IMG/VR virus record: IMGVR_UViG_3300043418_000114
Span: 186,001 to 250,000 of that record
Reading direction: 5' to 3' (one strand)
Length of the DNA stretch: 64,000 bases
Shown here: positions 36,274-56,861 of the stretch, in pieces
How the letters are laid out: every line of letters begins with the position of its first letter
How positions within the stretch are numbered: position 1 is the stretch's first letter
Made by a program: the position numbers and the translations under genes
The notes under the pieces: generated by a model
The model's database searches: none
Seen by the model: the letters and a program-made list of their open reading frames with translations, nothing else
What the model was told of the DNA's origin: nothing

Positions 36274-37695
36274 TTACGACAAGTCGTAACGTGTCTTCAT
36301 CACTGTCTTCAACATGACGGCTTCTGGTGTGAAGTCTTCCAAGTCGTTAGACAATACAGAAGTTGCTAGTGCTGGGCTAAAGCCTGACACTAGTGCAGTA
36401 CCACTCTTATCGAATGACACTGGTGTGTTACCGTAACTTGCGTTCAAGTTCCAGAAGACAACTTTTGGAAGTGCGTAGCCTGCGGCTTCGTACTTACGTG
36501 CGATCATTTGCATCGCGGTGTCGTCATGCTTAACACATTGGTTAAATTGCATGTCTGAGAAGATAACAAGAGTTTCAGGCATTTCTGCTTGTGGAACACT
36601 GTTTTCTGTCGCAGTCTTCAGGATCTTTTCAAACGCCTTGTGAAGGTCTGTACTCATATCCCAGTTAGACTTGACCATTTGGTCAATCTTTTGGTTGATG
36701 TTACCCTTTAGGTGCATCAATTCTGGCTTGCTTGAGAAGGTCAAGAAGGTATCTTTGAACTTACCCTTGTTCTTATCAGCAAAGTACAAACCTAGGCTAA
36801 CAGCAACTTCCATGCAAGACAGGTTGCTCTTAGAGCCATGACCACCTGCTGGACAAGACATTGAACCAGAAACGTCAACCAGAGGAAGAACGTTTGCATC
36901 GCCAACGTAGTTAGGCATTGCTTCCCATTGCTTTTGGATCAAGTCAGTTTCAGTCTTGTTAAACTGCATCCAACCACCAATACGACCCTTCAGTACGTCA
37001 TATGGGAACACTGCGCCTGCGTTAACCTTAACACCAGCTTCGCCCTTAACGAGCTTAGTTACATATTCAGCGTATGTAGTACCATGACGGCCAAACGCTT
37101 TCTTGTAACGTGCATGTGCCACTGAAGGAACATGTGAGTAGTTGATGTTATCCCAATTTTGGGCACACATTTGTGTTTCAACAACATTAGTAAGGCCGAC
37201 TAGGCTCTTACGATATTGTTTAGGGGTCATTCCGAAGAATTGACGGATTTCACGTGCTACTTCACCTTTACGTGGAGTCCACTTAGCCGCAAGACCGTTA
37301 CCTGCACGTAGTGCATCGCCGAGCATAGTGTATGCCTTGGCCTTCACAGGCTGAGTCTTAAACACTAGCAAGTCGTCGTAACGACCCAATTCTGGAATCT
37401 TAGCCATCAAACGCATTGCGTCTTCTGGGTTAGTCTTTTCCAAGTGAACGAGGATGTCTCGGAAGACTTGACGTTCACCTGAACCACCACGTGCATCACG
37501 TGCCCATTGAGCGATACGCAATGCAAGATCAGAGTTCTCTACATAAGCCGCTGTGAAAGCCGGCACGATGTTTTTACCACGGCTTGCACCGATGTTGTAA
37601 AACAAATCAACACATGCGTTAGCACTTGATTTGCGAGCCTTCATACCATTGGTGGTACGAGTTGATTGATTCTTAACTGCTTCTGCGAATTGCAT
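36274..37695 (-). CDS. DUF2828-like TROVE/Ro-related protein with C-terminal vWA (MIDAS) domain
   Basis: 'ARD.RGG.GER', 'G.YDDL', 'AAKW.PR', DVSGS MIDAS, 'SDMQF', 'VFWNL', 'VSGFS'. Confidence 0.8.
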   Translation of the reverse strand: MQFAEAVKNQSTRTTNGMKARKSSANACVDLFYNIGASRGKNIVPAFTAAYVENSDLALRIAQWARDARGGSGERQVFRDILVHLEKTNPEDAMRLMAKIPELGRYDDLLVFKTQPVKAKAYTMLGDALRAGNGLAAKWTPRKGEVAREIRQFFGMTPKQYRKSLVGLTNVVETQMCAQNWDNINYSHVPSVAHARYKKAFGRHGTTYAEYVTKLVKGEAGVKVNAGAVFPYDVLKGRIGGWMQFNKTETDLIQKQWEAMPNYVGDANVLPLVDVSGSMSCPAGGHGSKSNLSCMEVAVSLGLYFADKNKGKFKDTFLTFSSKPELMHLKGNINQKIDQMVKSNWDMSTDLHKAFEKILKTATENSVPQAEMPETLVIFSDMQFNQCVKHDDTAMQMIARKYEAAGYALPKVVFWNLNASYGNTPVSFDKSGTALVSGFSPALATSVLSNDLEDFTPEAVMLKTVMKTRYDLS

Positions 37696-41200: not shown

Positions 41201-42079
41201 TGGAGCACTGAGAATACATGCTTACCGAGTAACACCTCAGACATTATTACAATCCTTGCGAGACTGCTTTCTTCTGACTTCCACTGCAACCTCTTGCGAG
41301 TATCACAGTCTGTTACCAACATCGCCGTTTTAAGTCAGGCATTAGACTTGACGCTGTATGCTATTCTACGCTTTCTATCCCGTTGACCTTTAGAGCCATT
41401 CACTACCGCTAAGTAGTTACGAAACTTCCTGCATAAACAGATTTCACCTTGCGAGTTACGTCTGACTGGATTATCTTGCGACTCCAGTATTAGATGCTTT
41501 TCACATACAACCGAGACAGACTTTGCTTTTTTAATCGATAGAAGGGATCGAACCTTCAGCCGACTGCTTGAAAATGCAGTTGATCTACCATTGATCTATA
41601 TCAACCTACTGTGATGTGCTGTCTCAGTTGCTTCATAATCTTTTGGACTACAAAATACAACACGCCACGTACCTTTTGTCTCGCGGACTACTCAGTCGTC
41701 TTTCACGATTAATGTCGGGTCTCGGCTTTCGCGTACCTCCATCAACCATTCAAACTGCATTACAACTCTTAGATGCGACTCCTCGAATCATAACACTACC
41801 CTTTCTCATACCAATTAACTGGACTGGTTTTGTCGTGAGGTCAGCACCACCTGTTACTCTCTAATGACTTGCGTTACCCTCGATATTATCTCAGGCGCTT
41901 AAGCCACTAATTCTTTCCACAACTTCCAGCGTCATTGTTATCACCACCGGTCTTATCAGTGATGAAACCCTCGCGGGTTTGAGCAGGCTTGCTTAGATGA
42001 ACTATTTCTAGCGCGGGTCTGTAGGAGACTACCGCTTTGGGCCGATCACTCGGCTTATTCTAATGAGGCTAAGCCCCCA
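41201..42079 (-). ncRNA. GOLLD-like giant structured RNA with an embedded tRNA-Glu-like domain
   Basis: About 880 nt without a credible ORF; many GCAA/GNRA-capped stems; ends GCATGTATTCTCAGTGCTCCA; tRNA-cluster context; cloverleaf at 41533-41605. Confidence 0.65.
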
Positions 42080-42204: not shown

Positions 42205-42309
42205 TTTCTTAACATTGTTGAACATACTAGTGCATTTCCAAATTATGCTACTCCTCATCAGGGATGGAATCGAACCAACATCCCTAATACATTCAACAAT
42301 GCTAAGAAA
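42205..42309 (-). ncRNA. YrlA-topology tRNA-mimic RNA
   Basis: About 25-bp stem enclosing T loop TTCGATT, a short closed acceptor hairpin, then D arm TAGCATAATTTGGAAATGC. Confidence 0.6.
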
Positions 42310-48482: not shown

Positions 48483-48572
48483 TGGCAGAGAGTAAGGGAT
48501 TCGAACCCTTGTGCCGCGCTAGCGACCATCACCTTTCCAAGATGCGCCCTTAAGCCTCTCGGGCAACTCTCT
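48483..48572 (-). tRNA. tRNA-Ser(GGA)
   Basis: Loop TTGGAAA; long V arm; CCA. Confidence 0.85.
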
Positions 48573-48577
48573 ATATT

Positions 48578-48676
48578 TGGTGCCTCTGGCAGGACTCGAA
48601 CCTGCACACTGTGGCTTATCTAGCCACTGCTTTGGGGAGGTATAAGCTCCCTTCTTTACCATTAAGCTACAGAGGC
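48578..48676 (-). tRNA. tRNA with TAT anticodon (Ile AUA) and about 29-nt variable region
   Basis: GGGAG-CTTATAC-CTCCC; V hairpin GTGGCT-AGATA-AGCCAC; A73; CCA. Confidence 0.75.
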
Positions 48677-50907: not shown

Positions 50908-51447
50908 TCATTTTACAACATCTTGCCAACGAATGACTAGTGATTTGTCGTAATTTTGAGTTTTGTTCTTTCTGCGATTTTCCAATGCAGGAAGATACTG
51001 AAAGTTATCAGGATGATGTAGACCTCCGCATGCCAATGGCACAATATGGTCGACTTCGTATCCAGTTGGACAACTCTCGTAAATTTTTCGAATTAACTGA
51101 CTATCAACGTAATCAGGTGTTGCGTTGTACTTTCTCGCTCTATAGTTTTGTACATTCAACACATTTAATTTTGCAGATTCGTCTTTCGTTTTTCTTCCAA
51201 CTTTATCCCAATAAGCTATTCTAGCCTCTGATATTTTGGCAGAATGTTCTGCTGTTCTCGGCTTAAGTTTCTTTCCTTTGGTACTGGTTTGCTTAATTGA
51301 ACCAGAAGCAATTCCTTCTTTAACCGAGTTGGCTATTTTTCGTTTCGTTTCATCGGATCTAACTCTAGAGTTAGCACACGGTCTACAACAATACTTTCCT
51401 GATCCATATGATCCATCATGTTCACTATTACATTTGAGGCAAAACAT
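50908..51447 (-). CDS. HNH homing-endonuclease-like protein
   Basis: N-terminal Cys motifs; NUMOD-like basic helices; 'EVDHIVPL..GGLH...N.QYL...ENRRK'. Confidence 0.82.
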   Translation of the reverse strand: MFCLKCNSEHDGSYGSGKYCCRPCANSRVRSDETKRKIANSVKEGIASGSIKQTSTKGKKLKPRTAEHSAKISEARIAYWDKVGRKTKDESAKLNVLNVQNYRARKYNATPDYVDSQLIRKIYESCPTGYEVDHIVPLACGGLHHPDNFQYLPALENRRKNKTQNYDKSLVIRWQDVVK

Positions 51448-51908: not shown

Positions 51909-52022
51909 AACAGGATACATTCTTGACGAATGCTCTACCAATTGAGCTAATCTCGCATGAAGCGAAATGTTGGAATCGAACCAACGACACATCGTTTGAT
52001 GTAGTTTGCTGTATGTATCCTA
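51909..52022 (-). ncRNA. CAGCA-scaffold RNA copy 6, with a permuted T-acceptor-D tRNA mimic
   Basis: TAGGATAC-ATA-CAGCA, tetraloop hairpin, GTTGG-TTCGATT-CCAAC, closed acceptor, TAGCTCAATTGGTAGAGC, GTATCCTG. Confidence 0.85.
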
Positions 52023-52601: not shown

Positions 52602-52621
52602 GTAATGTGTTGCAAGTATGT

Positions 52622-54148: not shown

Positions 54149-54222
54149 TGGTCTGGGTGGCAAGAATCGAACTTGCTCCTCGAGTATCCAAGACTCGCCG
54201 ACTTCCATTATCCTACACCCAG
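54149..54222 (-). tRNA. tRNA-Pro(TGG), second copy (A37)
   Basis: Loop CTTGGAT; CCA. Confidence 0.82.
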
Positions 54223-54238
54223 ATTGATAAATACTATT

Positions 54239-54802
54239 ATGAATACACAAAAACTACGCCAACTAATGAATCTATGCGAGGGTCGTAACCCTGATCTAGA
54301 ATATCAAGACGCAGAAGATAAAGTCATTGCTAGACTTCAAAGTTATAAGAGTCAATCTTATACTAAACTTGCTCAAAAAGTCAACCGCATCAAAGAATTA
54401 AAAGATGAGGTCAAGGCCTTAGAGGAAGAAGTCAAACAAGAAACTCGTGAAAACATCAATGATTTGTTTGATGCCGAAGATGCTGTAAAAACACGCATCG
54501 TTGAAACTATGAGTTTTATTCTTACTCTAAGCAAGAATCCAAAAGCTACAGAAACTCCTAAGTACAAGGACATTCTGAATGAACTTACTAATCACTTGAC
54601 TCCAGAGTTGATTAACGTCCTAGAAGGTCTTAAGAAACAAATGGTTACTGTTACTCAGAAAGAACCATCATTGAAAATTGAACCACTTAAGGAAGGTTTC
54701 TTAGGCTCATACTTTGCACGTTTGAAAAACGCTGTTATGAGTTGGGGTCAACGTTATGACCAGAAACTCGATAACTTAAAGCGTTTAGCTTACTCAAAAT
54801 AA
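54239..54802 (+). CDS. Hypothetical coiled-coil protein
   Basis: ATAAATA immediately upstream; 187 aa. Confidence 0.65.
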   Translation: MNTQKLRQLMNLCEGRNPDLEYQDAEDKVIARLQSYKSQSYTKLAQKVNRIKELKDEVKALEEEVKQETRENINDLFDAEDAVKTRIVETMSFILTLSKNPKATETPKYKDILNELTNHLTPELINVLEGLKKQMVTVTQKEPSLKIEPLKEGFLGSYFARLKNAVMSWGQRYDQKLDNLKRLAYSK

Positions 54803-54804
54803 GT

Positions 54805-54882
54805 TGGCAGAGGTAACTGGATTCGAACCAGTGTTCACGATTTCAAAGACCGTAGCTTTAGGCCAGACTAAGCTATACCCCA
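54805..54882 (-). tRNA. tRNA-Gln(TTG), second copy
   Basis: U1; loop CTTTGAA; G73; CCA. Confidence 0.85.
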
Positions 54883-55342
54883 ACAAAAAACGCTATTCAT
54901 TAGTATACAGGACATAAGGCCGTCAGGAGGCGAAATGCAGTGTTCATCCTATGATACTAGTGAATAGCATCTTGCGATGCTATGCTAGAGTCAATGCTCT
55001 AGCCAGTTATTTGTACTCCCGGGTTCTCGCCCACGGTTTCATCCAACTGTCCGCCCGTTCAAAGTTTATTATAGTGTTCTTTCAGGACCTCGTTTCCTGG
55101 GCTTACGCTCTTATTCAACACTGTTAATCAGCATAGTTTACTAGCTTTTTCAAACTAGCTAACTTTTCCTGATCCTTTTTCGCTCTCTCATACTTGTTTC
55201 GCATGAGAATTCTAACTTGTTCTTTTGACAGAGTATGGTTCTTTAACCAGTTATCTTTGTCAGAAGAACTTAATCTTATTTCATCCTTCAATTTTTATCA
55301 ATCTTTCTTTTTGTTCTGTTGTATTTTTGCTACATTCAAAAC

Positions 55343-55378
55343 AAAAAACCTCTGGGTTTTTAATCCAGAGGTTTCATA
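55343..55378 (-). terminator. Intrinsic terminator of the putative attenuator
   Basis: AAACCTCTGG-ATTAAAAAC-CCAGAGGTTT followed by TTTG. Confidence 0.8.
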
Positions 55379-55397
55379 ATCTTTTTGGAGTGTTACT

Positions 55398-55571
55398 TTA
55401 AGCGTAACCGTCTCCTTCTATGAAACTCTCTGGTGTTCTCGCATCATAATTGCTCTCTGATCCGCGAATACTAGATAAGCCTGATGTACCAAACGTAGCC
55501 CATACCGGCTGTTGCAATGCGAAAGCATTTAGCCCTGTATGTTTAGCGGTTTGACACATTATGTTTTTCAT
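55398..55571 (-). CDS. Putative 57-aa leader peptide containing an antiterminator strand
   Basis: MKNIMCQTAKHTGLNAFALQQPVWATFGTSGLSSIRGSESNYDARTPESFIEGDGYA; CCAGAGAGTTTCATA (55419-55433) complements the terminator 5' arm. Confidence 0.6.
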   Translation of the reverse strand: MKNIMCQTAKHTGLNAFALQQPVWATFGTSGLSSIRGSESNYDARTPESFIEGDGYA

Positions 55572-55648
55572 AGTAAGTTTATTTATCTCTGATTAAAAAT
55601 TTAGTCATTTAAGACTGGTTTTTTGTTGTTTTTGCAACGTATGAGTGA

Positions 55649-55775
55649 AGTATAACTTGTTTTCGATTAGTTGTCAACAACTTTTTTCGTTAACTTGTCC
55701 AAAACTTCAAAATTCTTTTTTGCTCGATTTCTCAAGCAATGTGTGTAGTATATATCTGTTTTGAGTTGTTGTCAA
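55649..55775 (-). promoter_or_regulatory. Tandem sigma70 promoters heading the tRNA array
   Basis: TTGACA-N17-TATACT at 55747-55775 and 55649-55677. Confidence 0.7.
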
Positions 55776-56820: not shown

Positions 56821-56861
56821 CCAGTATTTATAGACAAGGTTCCTTCAGAATAAATATCAAC

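What the first reader, a model, noticed from the sequence alone, without database searches (positions are those of the whole stretch)
55343..55775. Leader-peptide attenuator sampling all 20 amino acids at the head of the tRNA array
Tandem promoters lead into a 57-codon ORF that is below the ORF-track cutoff. It contains every amino acid and, by hand count, about 41 distinct codons, including all four Gly codons, ATA, AGA and CTA. Its codons 47-51 (CCAGAGAGTTTCATA) are complementary to TATGAAAC-CTCTGG, the 5' arm of a strong terminator about 20 nt after the stop. By trp/his attenuator logic, smooth translation masks the antiterminator and transcription stops. Stalling from loss of almost any host tRNA would allow read-through into the tRNA genes. 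This would be a general tRNA-depletion sensor (inference).
Basis: partly seen in the sequence, partly recalled or inferred. Interest (0 to 1): 0.85.

Follow-up and report, generated by a model that had tools for sequence, protein, structure and literature searches.

The report
Phage leader ORF gating a tRNA array
A short translated reading frame in front of a giant phage's tRNA genes carries every amino acid and can pair with its own terminator, so it looks like a switch that reads how well the infected cell can translate; this would be a new kind of sensor, but it has not been tested at the bench.

Summary
Two consensus promoters lead into a 57-codon ORF (55398-55571) with all 20 amino acids and 41 distinct codons. 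Codons 47-52 pair with the 5' arm of a strong terminator.

About 40 relatives exist, all in uncultivated phage contigs. Wherever enough DNA is present, the ORF heads a same-strand tRNA array.
- The ORF stays open and is under purifying selection (body dN/dS 0.39).
- The codon 47-52 encoding ranks in the top 0.1-4% of synonymous encodings for pairing with the terminator arm in 28/28 relatives, with compensatory changes.
- Antiterminator and terminator energies differ by at most 4.7 kcal/mol.
- The start-codon region's best partner is the same codon 47-52 segment in 28/28, a possible anti-antiterminator.
- All 20 amino acids are kept in 37/38 proteins, and in 28/30 within the 42-46 codons upstream of the pairing segment (2.7% of windows in real genes). 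Rare Cys, His and Trp move position rather than disappear.
- Decoding diversity exceeds every window of the phage's real genes.

Best reading: a ribosome-dependent attenuator that reports overall decoding capacity. Caveats: no experiments, no canonical Shine-Dalgarno, and a further promoter, a small gene and a structured RNA between terminator and tRNAs.

The parts
55747..55775 (-). Distal promoter P1 (TTGACA-17-TATACT, 11/12), preceded by an A-tract
   Evidence: a distal promoter about 200 nt upstream of the ATG is present in most relatives
55720..55739 (-). Hairpin with a GAAA tetraloop just downstream of P1; part of a repeated promoter-hairpin module
   Evidence: read from the sequence; the same module is seen in L004. 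Function not tested.
55649..55677 (-). Proximal promoter P2 (TTGACA-17-TATACT, 11/12)
   Evidence: 26 of the 27 relatives with enough upstream DNA have a promoter with 10-12/12 matches 104-107 nt upstream of the ATG, and one (L053) has it at -93
55572..55642 (-). 5' leader of about 70 nt. It has a conserved A/U-rich stretch (TAAATAAAC) and only a distant purine-rich (AGAGA/AGGAC) element about 15 nt before the ATG, so there is no canonical Shine-Dalgarno.
   Evidence: conserved even in the most distant relatives
55566..55573 (-). Segment A: translation-initiation region CUAUGAAA (start codon 55569-55571). It can form 8 bp with UUUCAUAG of segment B and is a candidate anti-antiterminator.
   Evidence: RNAalifold chose this helix. 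Segment B is its best partner in the transcript in 28/28 relatives. It is in the MFE of the naked transcript in 9/28. All pairs are invariant, so there is no covariation test.
55398..55571 (-). Leader ORF, 57 codons plus stop; all 20 amino acids, 41 distinct codons, 35 of 45 NNY/NNA/NNG decoding classes
   Evidence: The ORF is open in about 40 relatives at 52-59 aa. dN/dS is 0.39 in the body. AlphaFold pLDDT is 57 with no secondary structure.
55434..55568 (-). Sensing zone: elongation codons 2-46, upstream of segment B, which by themselves encode all 20 amino acids
   Evidence: 28/30 relatives have all 20 in these 42-46 codons, against 2.7% of 45-aa windows of real genes. There is no excess RNA structure here.
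55418..55433 (-). Segment B: codons 47-51 plus the first base of codon 52 (CCAGAGAGUUUCAUAG), the 5' strand of the antiterminator
   Evidence: (native encoding in the top 0.1-4% of synonymous encodings in 28/28)
55387..55415 (-). Inner hairpin (GGAG..GUUAC-loop-GUAAC..CUCC) whose apical loop holds the stop codon (55398-55400)
   Evidence: U-A to A-U compensatory change in L026, L042/L048 and L053 (UA:16, AU:4).
55365..55378 (-). Segment C: UAUGAAACCUCUGG. It pairs either with segment B (antiterminator) or with segment D (terminator).
55343..55355 (-). Segment D: the 3' arm of the terminator (CCAGAGG) and the U-tract
   Evidence: terminator hairpin of -15 to -23 kcal/mol in all 28 relatives
55273..55301 (-). 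Promoter-like site P3 (TTGATA-17-TAAGAT, 9/12 here; 9-11/12 in 24/27 relatives), 21-43 nt after the terminator
55124..55291 (-). 55-aa gene. Its TTG/ATG start sits 4 nt after the P3 -35 hexamer, so the full-length product can only come from transcripts that read through the terminator (inference).
   Evidence: AlphaFold pLDDT 83, helix-turn-helix-like hairpin. No Pfam, PHROG or PDB match.
54885..55110 (-). Conserved structured RNA of unknown family between the 55-aa gene and the first tRNA
   Evidence: 25 of 36 predicted pairs with compensatory changes; no Rfam match
54805..54882 (-). First tRNA of the array (tRNA-Gln). The array of 45 tRNAs runs to 39695.

Best explanation
This is a ribosome-dependent transcription attenuator placed between strong early promoters and the first block of a phage tRNA array. 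Host RNA polymerase starts at P1/P2 and transcribes a 57-codon leader ORF. The last part of the ORF (segment B, codons 47-52) can pair with segment C, the 5' arm of an intrinsic terminator. If it does, the terminator (C:D) cannot form and transcription runs on into the 55-aa gene, a structured RNA and the first tRNAs. If the leading ribosome keeps pace with the polymerase, it sits on segment B or the stop-codon hairpin when segment D is made. C then pairs with D and transcription stops. If the ribosome is held up anywhere in codons 2-46, segment B is free and read-through follows. That zone contains at least one codon for each of the 20 amino acids and an unusually wide set of decoding classes. 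Shortage of almost any charged tRNA, or any general slowing of elongation, would therefore raise read-through, and recovery would restore termination. The start-codon region (segment A) can also pair with B. It may act as an anti-antiterminator that favours termination when no ribosome has loaded, as in the trp leader. Shown by computation: the anatomy, its conservation, selection on the B:C pairing, coding-type evolution and the conserved all-20 composition. Inferred: translation in vivo, the direction of the switch, the role of A:B, and what is sensed.
For: Anatomy.

Relatives: about 40, all in uncultivated phage contigs and metagenomes. A same-strand tRNA array starts 450-1000 nt downstream wherever enough DNA is present.

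Coding: the ORF is always open at 52-59 aa. Body dN/dS is 0.39 with dS 1.24. In the tail dS is only 0.42, which indicates RNA-level constraint.

B:C pairing:
- The native encoding is in the top 0.1-4% of synonymous encodings in 28/28, and the duplex is -17.8 to -29.0 kcal/mol.
- 95.2% of cells pair, against 36-51% when the partner is slid, and 0/500 shuffles reach the covariation score.
- Compensatory changes occur at two pairs, plus an A-U, G.U, G-C series across L047/L049, L040/L041 and L006.

Balanced switch: the constrained AT and T energies differ by at most 4.7 kcal/mol in all 28 (its column labels are swapped).

A:B: segment B is the best partner of the initiation region in 28/28.

Composition:
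- All 20 amino acids in 37/38 unique proteins.
- 28/30 have all 20 within the 42-46 codons upstream of B, against 2.7% of windows in real genes.
- A null that keeps each alignment column's residue frequencies but draws columns independently gives 49% of sequences with all 20. Observed is 15/16 clade representatives, P = 2e-4.
- Cys, His and Trp relocate rather than vanish. In L006 all three have moved.
- Decoding classes number 32-37 (mean 34.9), against 26.5 +/- 2.9 (maximum 34, n = 2210) in the phage's own genes and 31.1 +/- 2.2 for uniform random codons.

Peptide: no predicted fold (pLDDT 57, 31-row alignment), whereas the neighbouring 55-aa protein reaches pLDDT 83 with 13 rows.
Against: - There is no experiment of any kind, and the host is unknown.
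- There is no canonical Shine-Dalgarno. The nearest purine-rich element is about 15 nt from the ATG.
- A consensus-like promoter follows the terminator in 24/27 relatives, and the array has at least six internal promoters with 11-12/12 matches. The tRNAs therefore do not depend on read-through.
- The leader is much longer than classical leader peptides.
- Its amino-acid sequence is moderately conserved (dN/dS 0.39), and RNA structure in the body does not explain this.
- Given the amino-acid sequence, codon diversity exceeds genome codon usage (P 0.003-0.05 in 10 of 14 lineages tested, up to 0.30 in the rest) but only marginally exceeds uniform synonymous usage.
- Two relatives lack one amino acid: L024 has no Val and L042 has no internal Met. 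L042 also carries an uncompensated mismatch.
- In naked-RNA folds made before segment D exists, the full B:C pairing (at least 5 of 6 core bases) is in the MFE in only 10 of 28.
Confidence: 0.55

Rival explanations
1. The ORF is an ordinary, highly expressed early gene for a small protein or peptide with its own terminator. The pairing of its 3' end with the terminator arm, and of its start region with the same segment, serves mRNA stability or autoregulation of its own translation. It does not regulate read-through.
For: Purifying selection on the peptide in the ORF body, without RNA structure to explain it. Strong dedicated promoters and a strong terminator, followed by a fresh promoter, which makes it look like a self-contained unit. 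Gene callers annotated it as a gene in several assemblies.
Against: No predicted fold (pLDDT 57, pTM 0.12) despite a 31-row alignment, and no family match. A stability hairpin does not need to share a strand with the terminator, nor to be balanced in energy with it in 28/28 relatives. This view does not explain why Cys, His and Trp move about the sequence yet never disappear, nor why all 20 amino acids sit upstream of segment B. It also does not explain why the ORF is always at the head of a tRNA array while its upstream neighbours vary.
Confidence: 0.2
2. The same antiterminator/terminator switch is driven by a conserved nascent peptide that arrests or slows the ribosome at a defined place (TnaC/SecM/SpeFL style) in response to a specific signal, not by general tRNA supply.
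For: The conserved block PSIRGSE.NYDAR.PGSFIEG would fill the exit tunnel when the ribosome is on codons 47-58. dN/dS is below 1. Regulatory leader peptides with conserved sequences are typically arrest peptides (established knowledge).
Against: No known arrest motif, and no Pfam or PDB-type match was found. The resemblance of PVW...IRG to SecM is weak, and W24 is not conserved. An arrest peptide gives no reason for all-20 composition or for relocation of rare residues.
Confidence: 0.15
3. The transcript is mainly a structured non-coding or dual-function small RNA released by termination, and the ORF is incidental.
For: The 316-nt region folds well below shuffles (z = -5.65). Released attenuator RNAs can act in trans, for example rnTrpL in S. 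meliloti (PMC6614838).
Against: The frame is open in all of about 40 relatives despite near-saturated synonymous change (dS 1.24), and dN/dS is 0.39. Apart from the 3' switch, the ORF body has no more structure than synonymous recodings. There is no Rfam match.
Confidence: 0.07

Closest known systems
Leader-peptide transcription attenuators of amino-acid operons (trp, his, leu, thr, ilv, pheA)
   Same: A translated leader ORF sits upstream of an intrinsic terminator. Mutually exclusive antiterminator and terminator hairpins share one strand. One antiterminator strand lies inside or next to the ORF, so ribosome position chooses the fold. There may also be a third, upstream pairing that favours termination when nothing is translated.
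   Different: There is no run of codons for one amino acid. Instead every amino acid appears once or a few times and codon diversity is maximal. The leader is 52-59 codons, against 14-32. The element is in a phage, and the downstream genes are tRNAs, a small protein and an unknown RNA, not biosynthetic enzymes. The candidate anti-antiterminator uses the start codon itself. It is not a sequence member of any Rfam leader family (best match His_leader, 19.4 bits against a threshold of 49, E = 1.5).
Translation-stress attenuators upstream of ABC-F and other resistance genes (e.g. B. subtilis vmlR; PMC9226507)
   Same: Ribosome stalling on an upstream ORF shifts an anti-antiterminator / antiterminator / terminator set towards read-through. 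The signal is impaired translation, not one metabolite.
   Different: Those uORFs are only a few codons long and respond to particular antibiotics bound to the ribosome. Here the ORF is long and compositionally complete, and the proposed stress is lack of any charged tRNA.
T-box riboswitches
   Same: In function they are the nearest analogue. They sense tRNA status and switch between antiterminator and terminator to control genes of the translation apparatus.
   Different: T-boxes bind one uncharged tRNA directly through a specifier codon and a T-box sequence, without translation. No such elements were found here (Rfam scans), and this element needs a ribosome.
tnaC and other arrest-peptide leaders
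   Same: A conserved leader peptide whose translating ribosome, near the stop codon, decides transcription of downstream genes.
   Different: tnaC works through Rho and free tryptophan. There is no evidence of arrest or of a ligand here, and the terminator is intrinsic.

Membership tests
Leader-peptide (ribosome-mediated) transcription attenuators, trp/his class | A short ORF in the leader that is translated | tested here: inconclusive
   The ORF is conserved and open in about 40 relatives, with dN/dS 0.16-0.57. There is no canonical Shine-Dalgarno and no expression data.
Leader-peptide (ribosome-mediated) transcription attenuators, trp/his class | An intrinsic terminator between the leader ORF and the downstream genes | tested here: met
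   A hairpin of -15 to -23 kcal/mol plus a U-tract in the window and all 27 relatives analysed.
Leader-peptide (ribosome-mediated) transcription attenuators, trp/his class | An antiterminator that shares a strand with the terminator and is under selection | tested here: met
   Synonymous-recoding ranks of 0.1-4% in 28/28. 95.2% of cells paired, with compensatory pairs. Energies within 4.7 kcal/mol of the terminator state.
Leader-peptide (ribosome-mediated) transcription attenuators, trp/his class | The ORF overlaps a switch strand, so that ribosome position selects the fold | tested here: met
   Segment B is codons 47-52. The stop codon lies in the loop of the inner hairpin. Segment C starts 19 nt after the stop.
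Leader-peptide (ribosome-mediated) transcription attenuators, trp/his class | Clustered regulatory codons for the amino acid that is sensed | tested here: not met
   No amino acid exceeds 6 of 57 codons. Composition is instead maximally diverse.
Leader-peptide (ribosome-mediated) transcription attenuators, trp/his class | An upstream pairing (1:2 or anti-antiterminator) that gives termination without translation | tested here: inconclusive
   The start region pairs with segment B over 8 bp and is its best partner in 28/28. All these pairs are invariant, and only 6 bp remain in L051, L054 and L042.
Leader-peptide (ribosome-mediated) transcription attenuators, trp/his class | Read-through changes with translation or aminoacyl-tRNA supply | not testable with these tools
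   Needs reporter, Term-seq or in vitro coupled assays.
Rfam leader families (His_leader, Trp_leader, etc.) and T-box | Score above the family's gathering threshold | tested here: not met
   The best match is His_leader at 19.4 bits against 49, E = 1.5. There is no T-box match.
Ribosome arrest peptides (SecM, TnaC, MifM, SpeFL) | A known arrest motif or family match | tested here: not met
   No Pfam match. The PVW...IRG similarity to SecM is not conserved in the family. Arrest itself cannot be tested here.
RiPP precursor peptide | Conserved linkage to a modifying enzyme | tested here: not met
   Radical-SAM genes lie upstream in L019-L022 and L028 only. Other relatives have a sugar dehydratase or unrelated genes there. 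The downstream tRNA context is constant.

The most novel reading that the evidence does not exclude
Giant phages carry a universal translation speedometer. This is a leader ORF shaped by selection to contain at least one codon for every amino acid, and about 35 of 45 decoding classes, upstream of an antiterminator strand. Loss of any host tRNA would slow the leading ribosome and switch on read-through into phage tRNA genes and a small regulator. Such loss could come from anticodon-nuclease defence systems or from host shut-off. The result would be a feedback loop that keeps decoding capacity topped up.
Probability: 0.4. Interest if true: 0.95.

Novelty: new variant of a known kind. Interest (0 to 1): 0.85.

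Why it matters
Phage tRNA genes have been explained by codon compensation and, more recently, as a way round host defences that cut or deplete tRNAs (PMC10264068, PMC11555353, PMC12409363). How phages regulate these genes is essentially unknown. A leader ORF that samples every amino acid would be the first attenuator built to read overall decoding capacity, not the supply of a single amino acid. It would also be the first described for tRNA genes in a virus. The prediction is easy to test in vitro: omitting any one amino acid should raise read-through. The element could also serve as a compact genetic reporter of translation stress.

Tried and rejected
- DNA and protein searches of cultured phages found nothing, as did a scan of 185,579 bacterial and archaeal genomes.
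- Rfam gave no family. The His_leader match at E = 1.5 is chance level.
- Pfam, PHROGs and the ESM Atlas gave nothing for the peptide.
- RiPP precursor idea, prompted by radical-SAM neighbours in L019 and L028: rejected because upstream neighbours vary.
- A purine-rich 5'-UTR element (CAGAGA/CCAGGAC) as a further partner of segment C: rejected. It follows phylogeny and does not track segment C (L016 and L024-L031 combine CAGAGA with CCCCUGG).
- Two hairpins that RNAalifold placed inside the ORF body: rejected. The body is no more structured than synonymous recodings (z about 0 in five of six lineages tested; the exception is L054, z = -2.7).
- A 5-codon mini-ORF starting at the AUG inside segment C: its frame and length are not conserved.
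- SecM-like motif: W24 is not conserved.
- Codon diversity beyond uniform synonymous usage is only marginal.
- The first metagenome query with a gappy alignment failed and was repeated with a cleaner one.
- In one search my column labels for the two constrained folds were swapped. The unconstrained fold shows which is which.

Full report
**What is there.** The window is part of a 364-kb uncultivated phage contig (IMG/VR 3300043418_000114). Everything relevant is on the minus strand. ARAGORN finds 45 tRNA genes between 39695 and 54882, covering all 20 amino acids. Upstream of them, reading 5' to 3' on the minus strand, lie:
- two TTGACA-17-TATACT promoters (55775-55747 and 55677-55649);
- a leader of about 70 nt;
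- a 57-codon ORF (55571-55398);
- a terminator (stem 55374-55346 plus a U-tract).

The ORF has all 20 amino acids and 41 distinct codons, including the four Gly codons, ATA, AGA and CTA. Codons 47-51 plus the first base of codon 52 (segment B, 55433-55418) are complementary, with one bulged A, to 55378-55365 (segment C). Segment C is the 5' arm of the terminator and begins 19 nt after the stop. RNAfold places B:C, enclosing a small hairpin whose loop holds the stop codon, in the minimum-energy structure (z = -5.85).

**Is it more than chance?** For this single sequence the composition is only mildly unusual. All 20 amino acids occur in 5-10% of same-length ORFs or windows. Forty-one or more codons occur in 3.5% of random ORFs, though in none of 1141 windows of long ORFs. 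The 14-bp pairing is far beyond chance. The decisive evidence comes from relatives.

**Relatives.** Word-indexed and profile protein searches, plus scans of viral and metagenome contigs, gave about 40 homologues of 52-59 aa, down to 37% identity.
- None is in cultured phages or in 185,579 bacterial and archaeal genomes.
- There is no Pfam, PHROG or Rfam match.
- Wherever the contig extends far enough, a same-strand tRNA array begins 450-1000 nt downstream.
- Upstream neighbours differ between relatives: a sugar dehydratase, radical-SAM genes, or others.
- Of the 27 relatives with enough upstream DNA, 26 have a promoter 104-107 nt before the ATG and one has it at -93. Most have a second promoter about 200 nt upstream.

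**The ORF evolves as a coding sequence.** It is open in all relatives.
- In codons 5-46 synonymous change is near saturation (dS 1.24) while dN is 0.48, giving dN/dS 0.39.
- In codons 47-57 dS falls to 0.42, as expected if the RNA sequence itself is constrained there.
- The body is no more structured than synonymous recodings (z about 0 in five of six lineages; the exception is L054). The constraint in the body therefore appears to act mainly on the encoded amino acids.
- AlphaFold with a 31-row alignment predicts no fold (pLDDT 57, pTM 0.12, no secondary structure). As a control, the neighbouring 55-aa protein reaches pLDDT 83 with 13 rows.

**The B:C pairing is selected.**
- In all 28 distinct loci analysed, the native encoding of the six codons ranks in the top 0.1-4% of all synonymous encodings for duplex stability with segment C. 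Native values are -17.8 to -29.0 kcal/mol, against means of -8 to -17.
- On an alignment of 20 sequences, 95.2% of cells pair, against 36-51% when partners are slid by 1-3 columns. None of 500 shuffles reaches the covariation score.
- Compensatory changes occur in the outer helix (G-C/A-U) and in the inner hairpin. The inner-hairpin change (U-A to A-U) is seen in L026, in L042/L048 and in L053.
- Variants with a different C-terminus show an A-U, G.U, G-C series: L047/L049, then L040/L041, then L006.
- Distant members keep the helix by other means. L051 has 15 contiguous pairs, L053 has 18 with different amino acids, and L054 uses a shifted register.
- Every locus has a strong terminator hairpin.
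- The best structures with segment C forced to pair upstream or downstream differ by no more than 4.7 kcal/mol in all 28 (its labels are swapped). A switch would be expected to show this balance.

**A possible fourth strand.** RNAalifold on the whole transcript paired the start region CUAUGAAA with UUUCAUAG of segment B.
- Segment B is the best partner of the initiation region in 28/28 loci, at -6.5 to -10.4 kcal/mol against -3 to -7 for the runner-up.
- In folds of the naked transcript made before segment D exists, the full B:C pairing (at least 5 of 6 core bases) is in the MFE in 10 of 28, a further 7 show partial B:C pairing, and A:B forms in 9.
- All A:B pairs are invariant, and only 6 bp remain in the three members where the helix is shortened (L051, L054, L042). 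This helix is therefore a candidate anti-antiterminator and no more.

If it is real, the element has the full trp-type logic. With no ribosome, A:B and C:D form and transcription terminates. With a ribosome stalled in the body, B:C forms and transcription reads through. With a ribosome at the end of the ORF, C:D forms and transcription terminates.

**The all-20 property is conserved and positioned.**
- Of 38 unique proteins, 37 contain all 20 amino acids, with nearly always exactly one Cys, one His and one Trp.
- These rare residues move rather than vanish:
  - Trp15 to Trp24 in the window's clade;
  - His11 to His7 (P0011) or His19 (P0017);
  - Cys6 to Cys21 (P0018, P0020, P0023, while the sister P0022 keeps Cys6);
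  - in L006 all three have moved (His6, Cys15, Trp25).
- Sampling each alignment column independently gives all 20 in only 49% of sequences. The observed value is 36/37, or 15/16 for one representative per clade (P = 2e-4).
- An internal Met codon, which is needed to sample elongator tRNA-Met, is present in 27/28.
- In 28 of 30 loci all 20 amino acids are encoded within the 42-46 elongation codons upstream of segment B. This is the zone where a stalled ribosome would leave B free. Only 2.7% of 45-aa windows of the phage's own genes have all 20.
- The last single-copy residue (Asp43) is followed by three codons before segment B. That is about the reach of a ribosome's 3' edge from the A site (established footprint and toeprint geometry; inference).

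**Decoding diversity.**
- Family members use 37-42 distinct codons. Same-length windows of 29 bona fide genes use 32.1 +/- 3.0, with a maximum of 40.
- They use 32-37 of the 45 NNY/NNA/NNG classes (mean 34.9). Real genes use 26.5 +/- 2.9 (maximum 34, n = 2210). Uniform random codons give 31.1 +/- 2.2.
- Given the amino-acid sequences, codon diversity exceeds genome codon usage (P 0.003-0.05 in 10 of 14 lineages tested, up to 0.30 in the rest). It exceeds uniform synonymous usage only slightly. The codon-level signal is therefore weaker than the amino-acid-level one.

**What lies downstream.**
- A promoter-like site (P3, 9-11/12 matches) lies 21-43 nt after the terminator in 24 of 27 relatives.
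- A conserved 55-aa gene follows. Its start codon sits 4 nt after the P3 -35 hexamer. The full protein can therefore be made only from transcripts that pass the terminator (inference).
- Next comes a structured RNA of about 220 nt with no Rfam match, in which 25 of 36 predicted pairs show compensatory change.
- tRNA-Gln follows. The next strong minus-strand terminator is at 52601-52579, and the array has at least six internal promoters with 11-12/12 matches.

Read-through would thus add transcription from two strong promoters to the first block (six tRNAs, the unknown RNA and a 217-aa ORF), and may be the only source of the 55-aa protein. It is not the sole gate of the array.

**Mechanism proposed.** The element is a ribosome-dependent attenuator in which the race between the leading ribosome and RNA polymerase is read out at segment B. 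Fast translation leads to termination. Any delay in a zone that samples all amino acids leads to read-through. Phage tRNAs are thought to compensate for tRNA loss caused by host defences or shut-off (PMC10264068, PMC11555353, PMC12409363), so such a sensor would make biological sense.

The nearest characterised systems are the amino-acid-operon leaders and the translation-stress attenuators of resistance genes such as vmlR, which use anti-antiterminator, antiterminator and terminator hairpins (PMC9226507). This element differs from both in several ways: it lacks cognate codon runs, it is long, its composition is complete, it is viral, and its targets differ.

**Weak points.** There are no experimental data and the host is unknown. 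The ribosome-binding signal is atypical. P3 and the internal promoters weaken the gating argument. The peptide is moderately conserved, so a functional peptide or a nascent-chain effect cannot be excluded. Released attenuator RNAs and leader peptides can also act in trans (PMC6614838, PMC7298713).

I put 0.55 on the attenuator-sensor model as a whole. I put about 0.85 on the narrower statement that a translated ORF is coupled to a selected antiterminator/terminator switch.

Noticed in passing
window 54885-55110 (-): A conserved structured RNA of about 220 nt lies between the 55-aa gene and the first tRNA and is present in all relatives with enough DNA. 25 of 36 predicted pairs show compensatory changes and there is no Rfam match. 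It may be a new RNA family linked to phage tRNA arrays.
   Followed up: partly
window 41205-41668 (-): A GOLLD RNA (203.5 bits, E = 1.7e-56) sits inside the tRNA array. It contains a tRNA-like element (41532-41606) that ARAGORN reports with an odd 4-base anticodon.
   Followed up: no
window 55124-55291 (-) and 55273-55301 (-): A conserved 55-aa helical protein (pLDDT 83) has its TTG/ATG start always 4 nt after the -35 hexamer of a conserved promoter-like site. The gene and the promoter therefore overlap in a fixed register. No Pfam, PHROG or PDB match.
   Followed up: partly
window 36274-37695 (-); 42206-42305 (-); 51909-52021 (-): A DUF2828/DUF7788 protein, annotated 'RNA-binding protein' in some Vibrio phages and widespread in large phages, lies near two weak Y-RNA-like (YrlA) matches (E about 0.001-0.003, below threshold). 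This could be a Ro/Y-RNA-like pair.
   Followed up: no
window 55720-55739 (-); L004 4730-4880: Each upstream tandem promoter is followed by a short hairpin with a GAAA tetraloop. The promoter-hairpin module of about 98 nt is repeated two or three times.
   Followed up: no
window 48483-48676 (-), 50908-51447 (-): Two unusually long tRNA predictions (Pro, 90 nt; Glu-CUC, 99 nt) and an HNH/endonuclease VII-like gene lie inside the array. Together they hint at insertions or mobile elements among the tRNAs.
   Followed up: no
L008 7039-7111; L037 5343-5415: A relative's array carries a tRNA with anticodon UUA, which reads the UAA stop codon. This is a possible suppressor tRNA.
   Followed up: no
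window 52609-52619 (-), 56822-56832 (-), 56847-56857 (+): TATAAATA-like motifs, resembling T4 late promoters, lie just upstream of several genes, while the tRNA region uses sigma-70-type consensus promoters.
   Followed up: no
L019, L021, L022, L028 (3' ends): Several short-read assemblies of relatives break inside or just after the leader's terminator hairpin. This is probably an assembly effect of the hairpin or of strain variation.
   Followed up: no
window 54173-54802 (+): A 183-209-aa coiled-coil-like ORF lies on the opposite strand, between two minus-strand tRNAs of the array.
   Followed up: no
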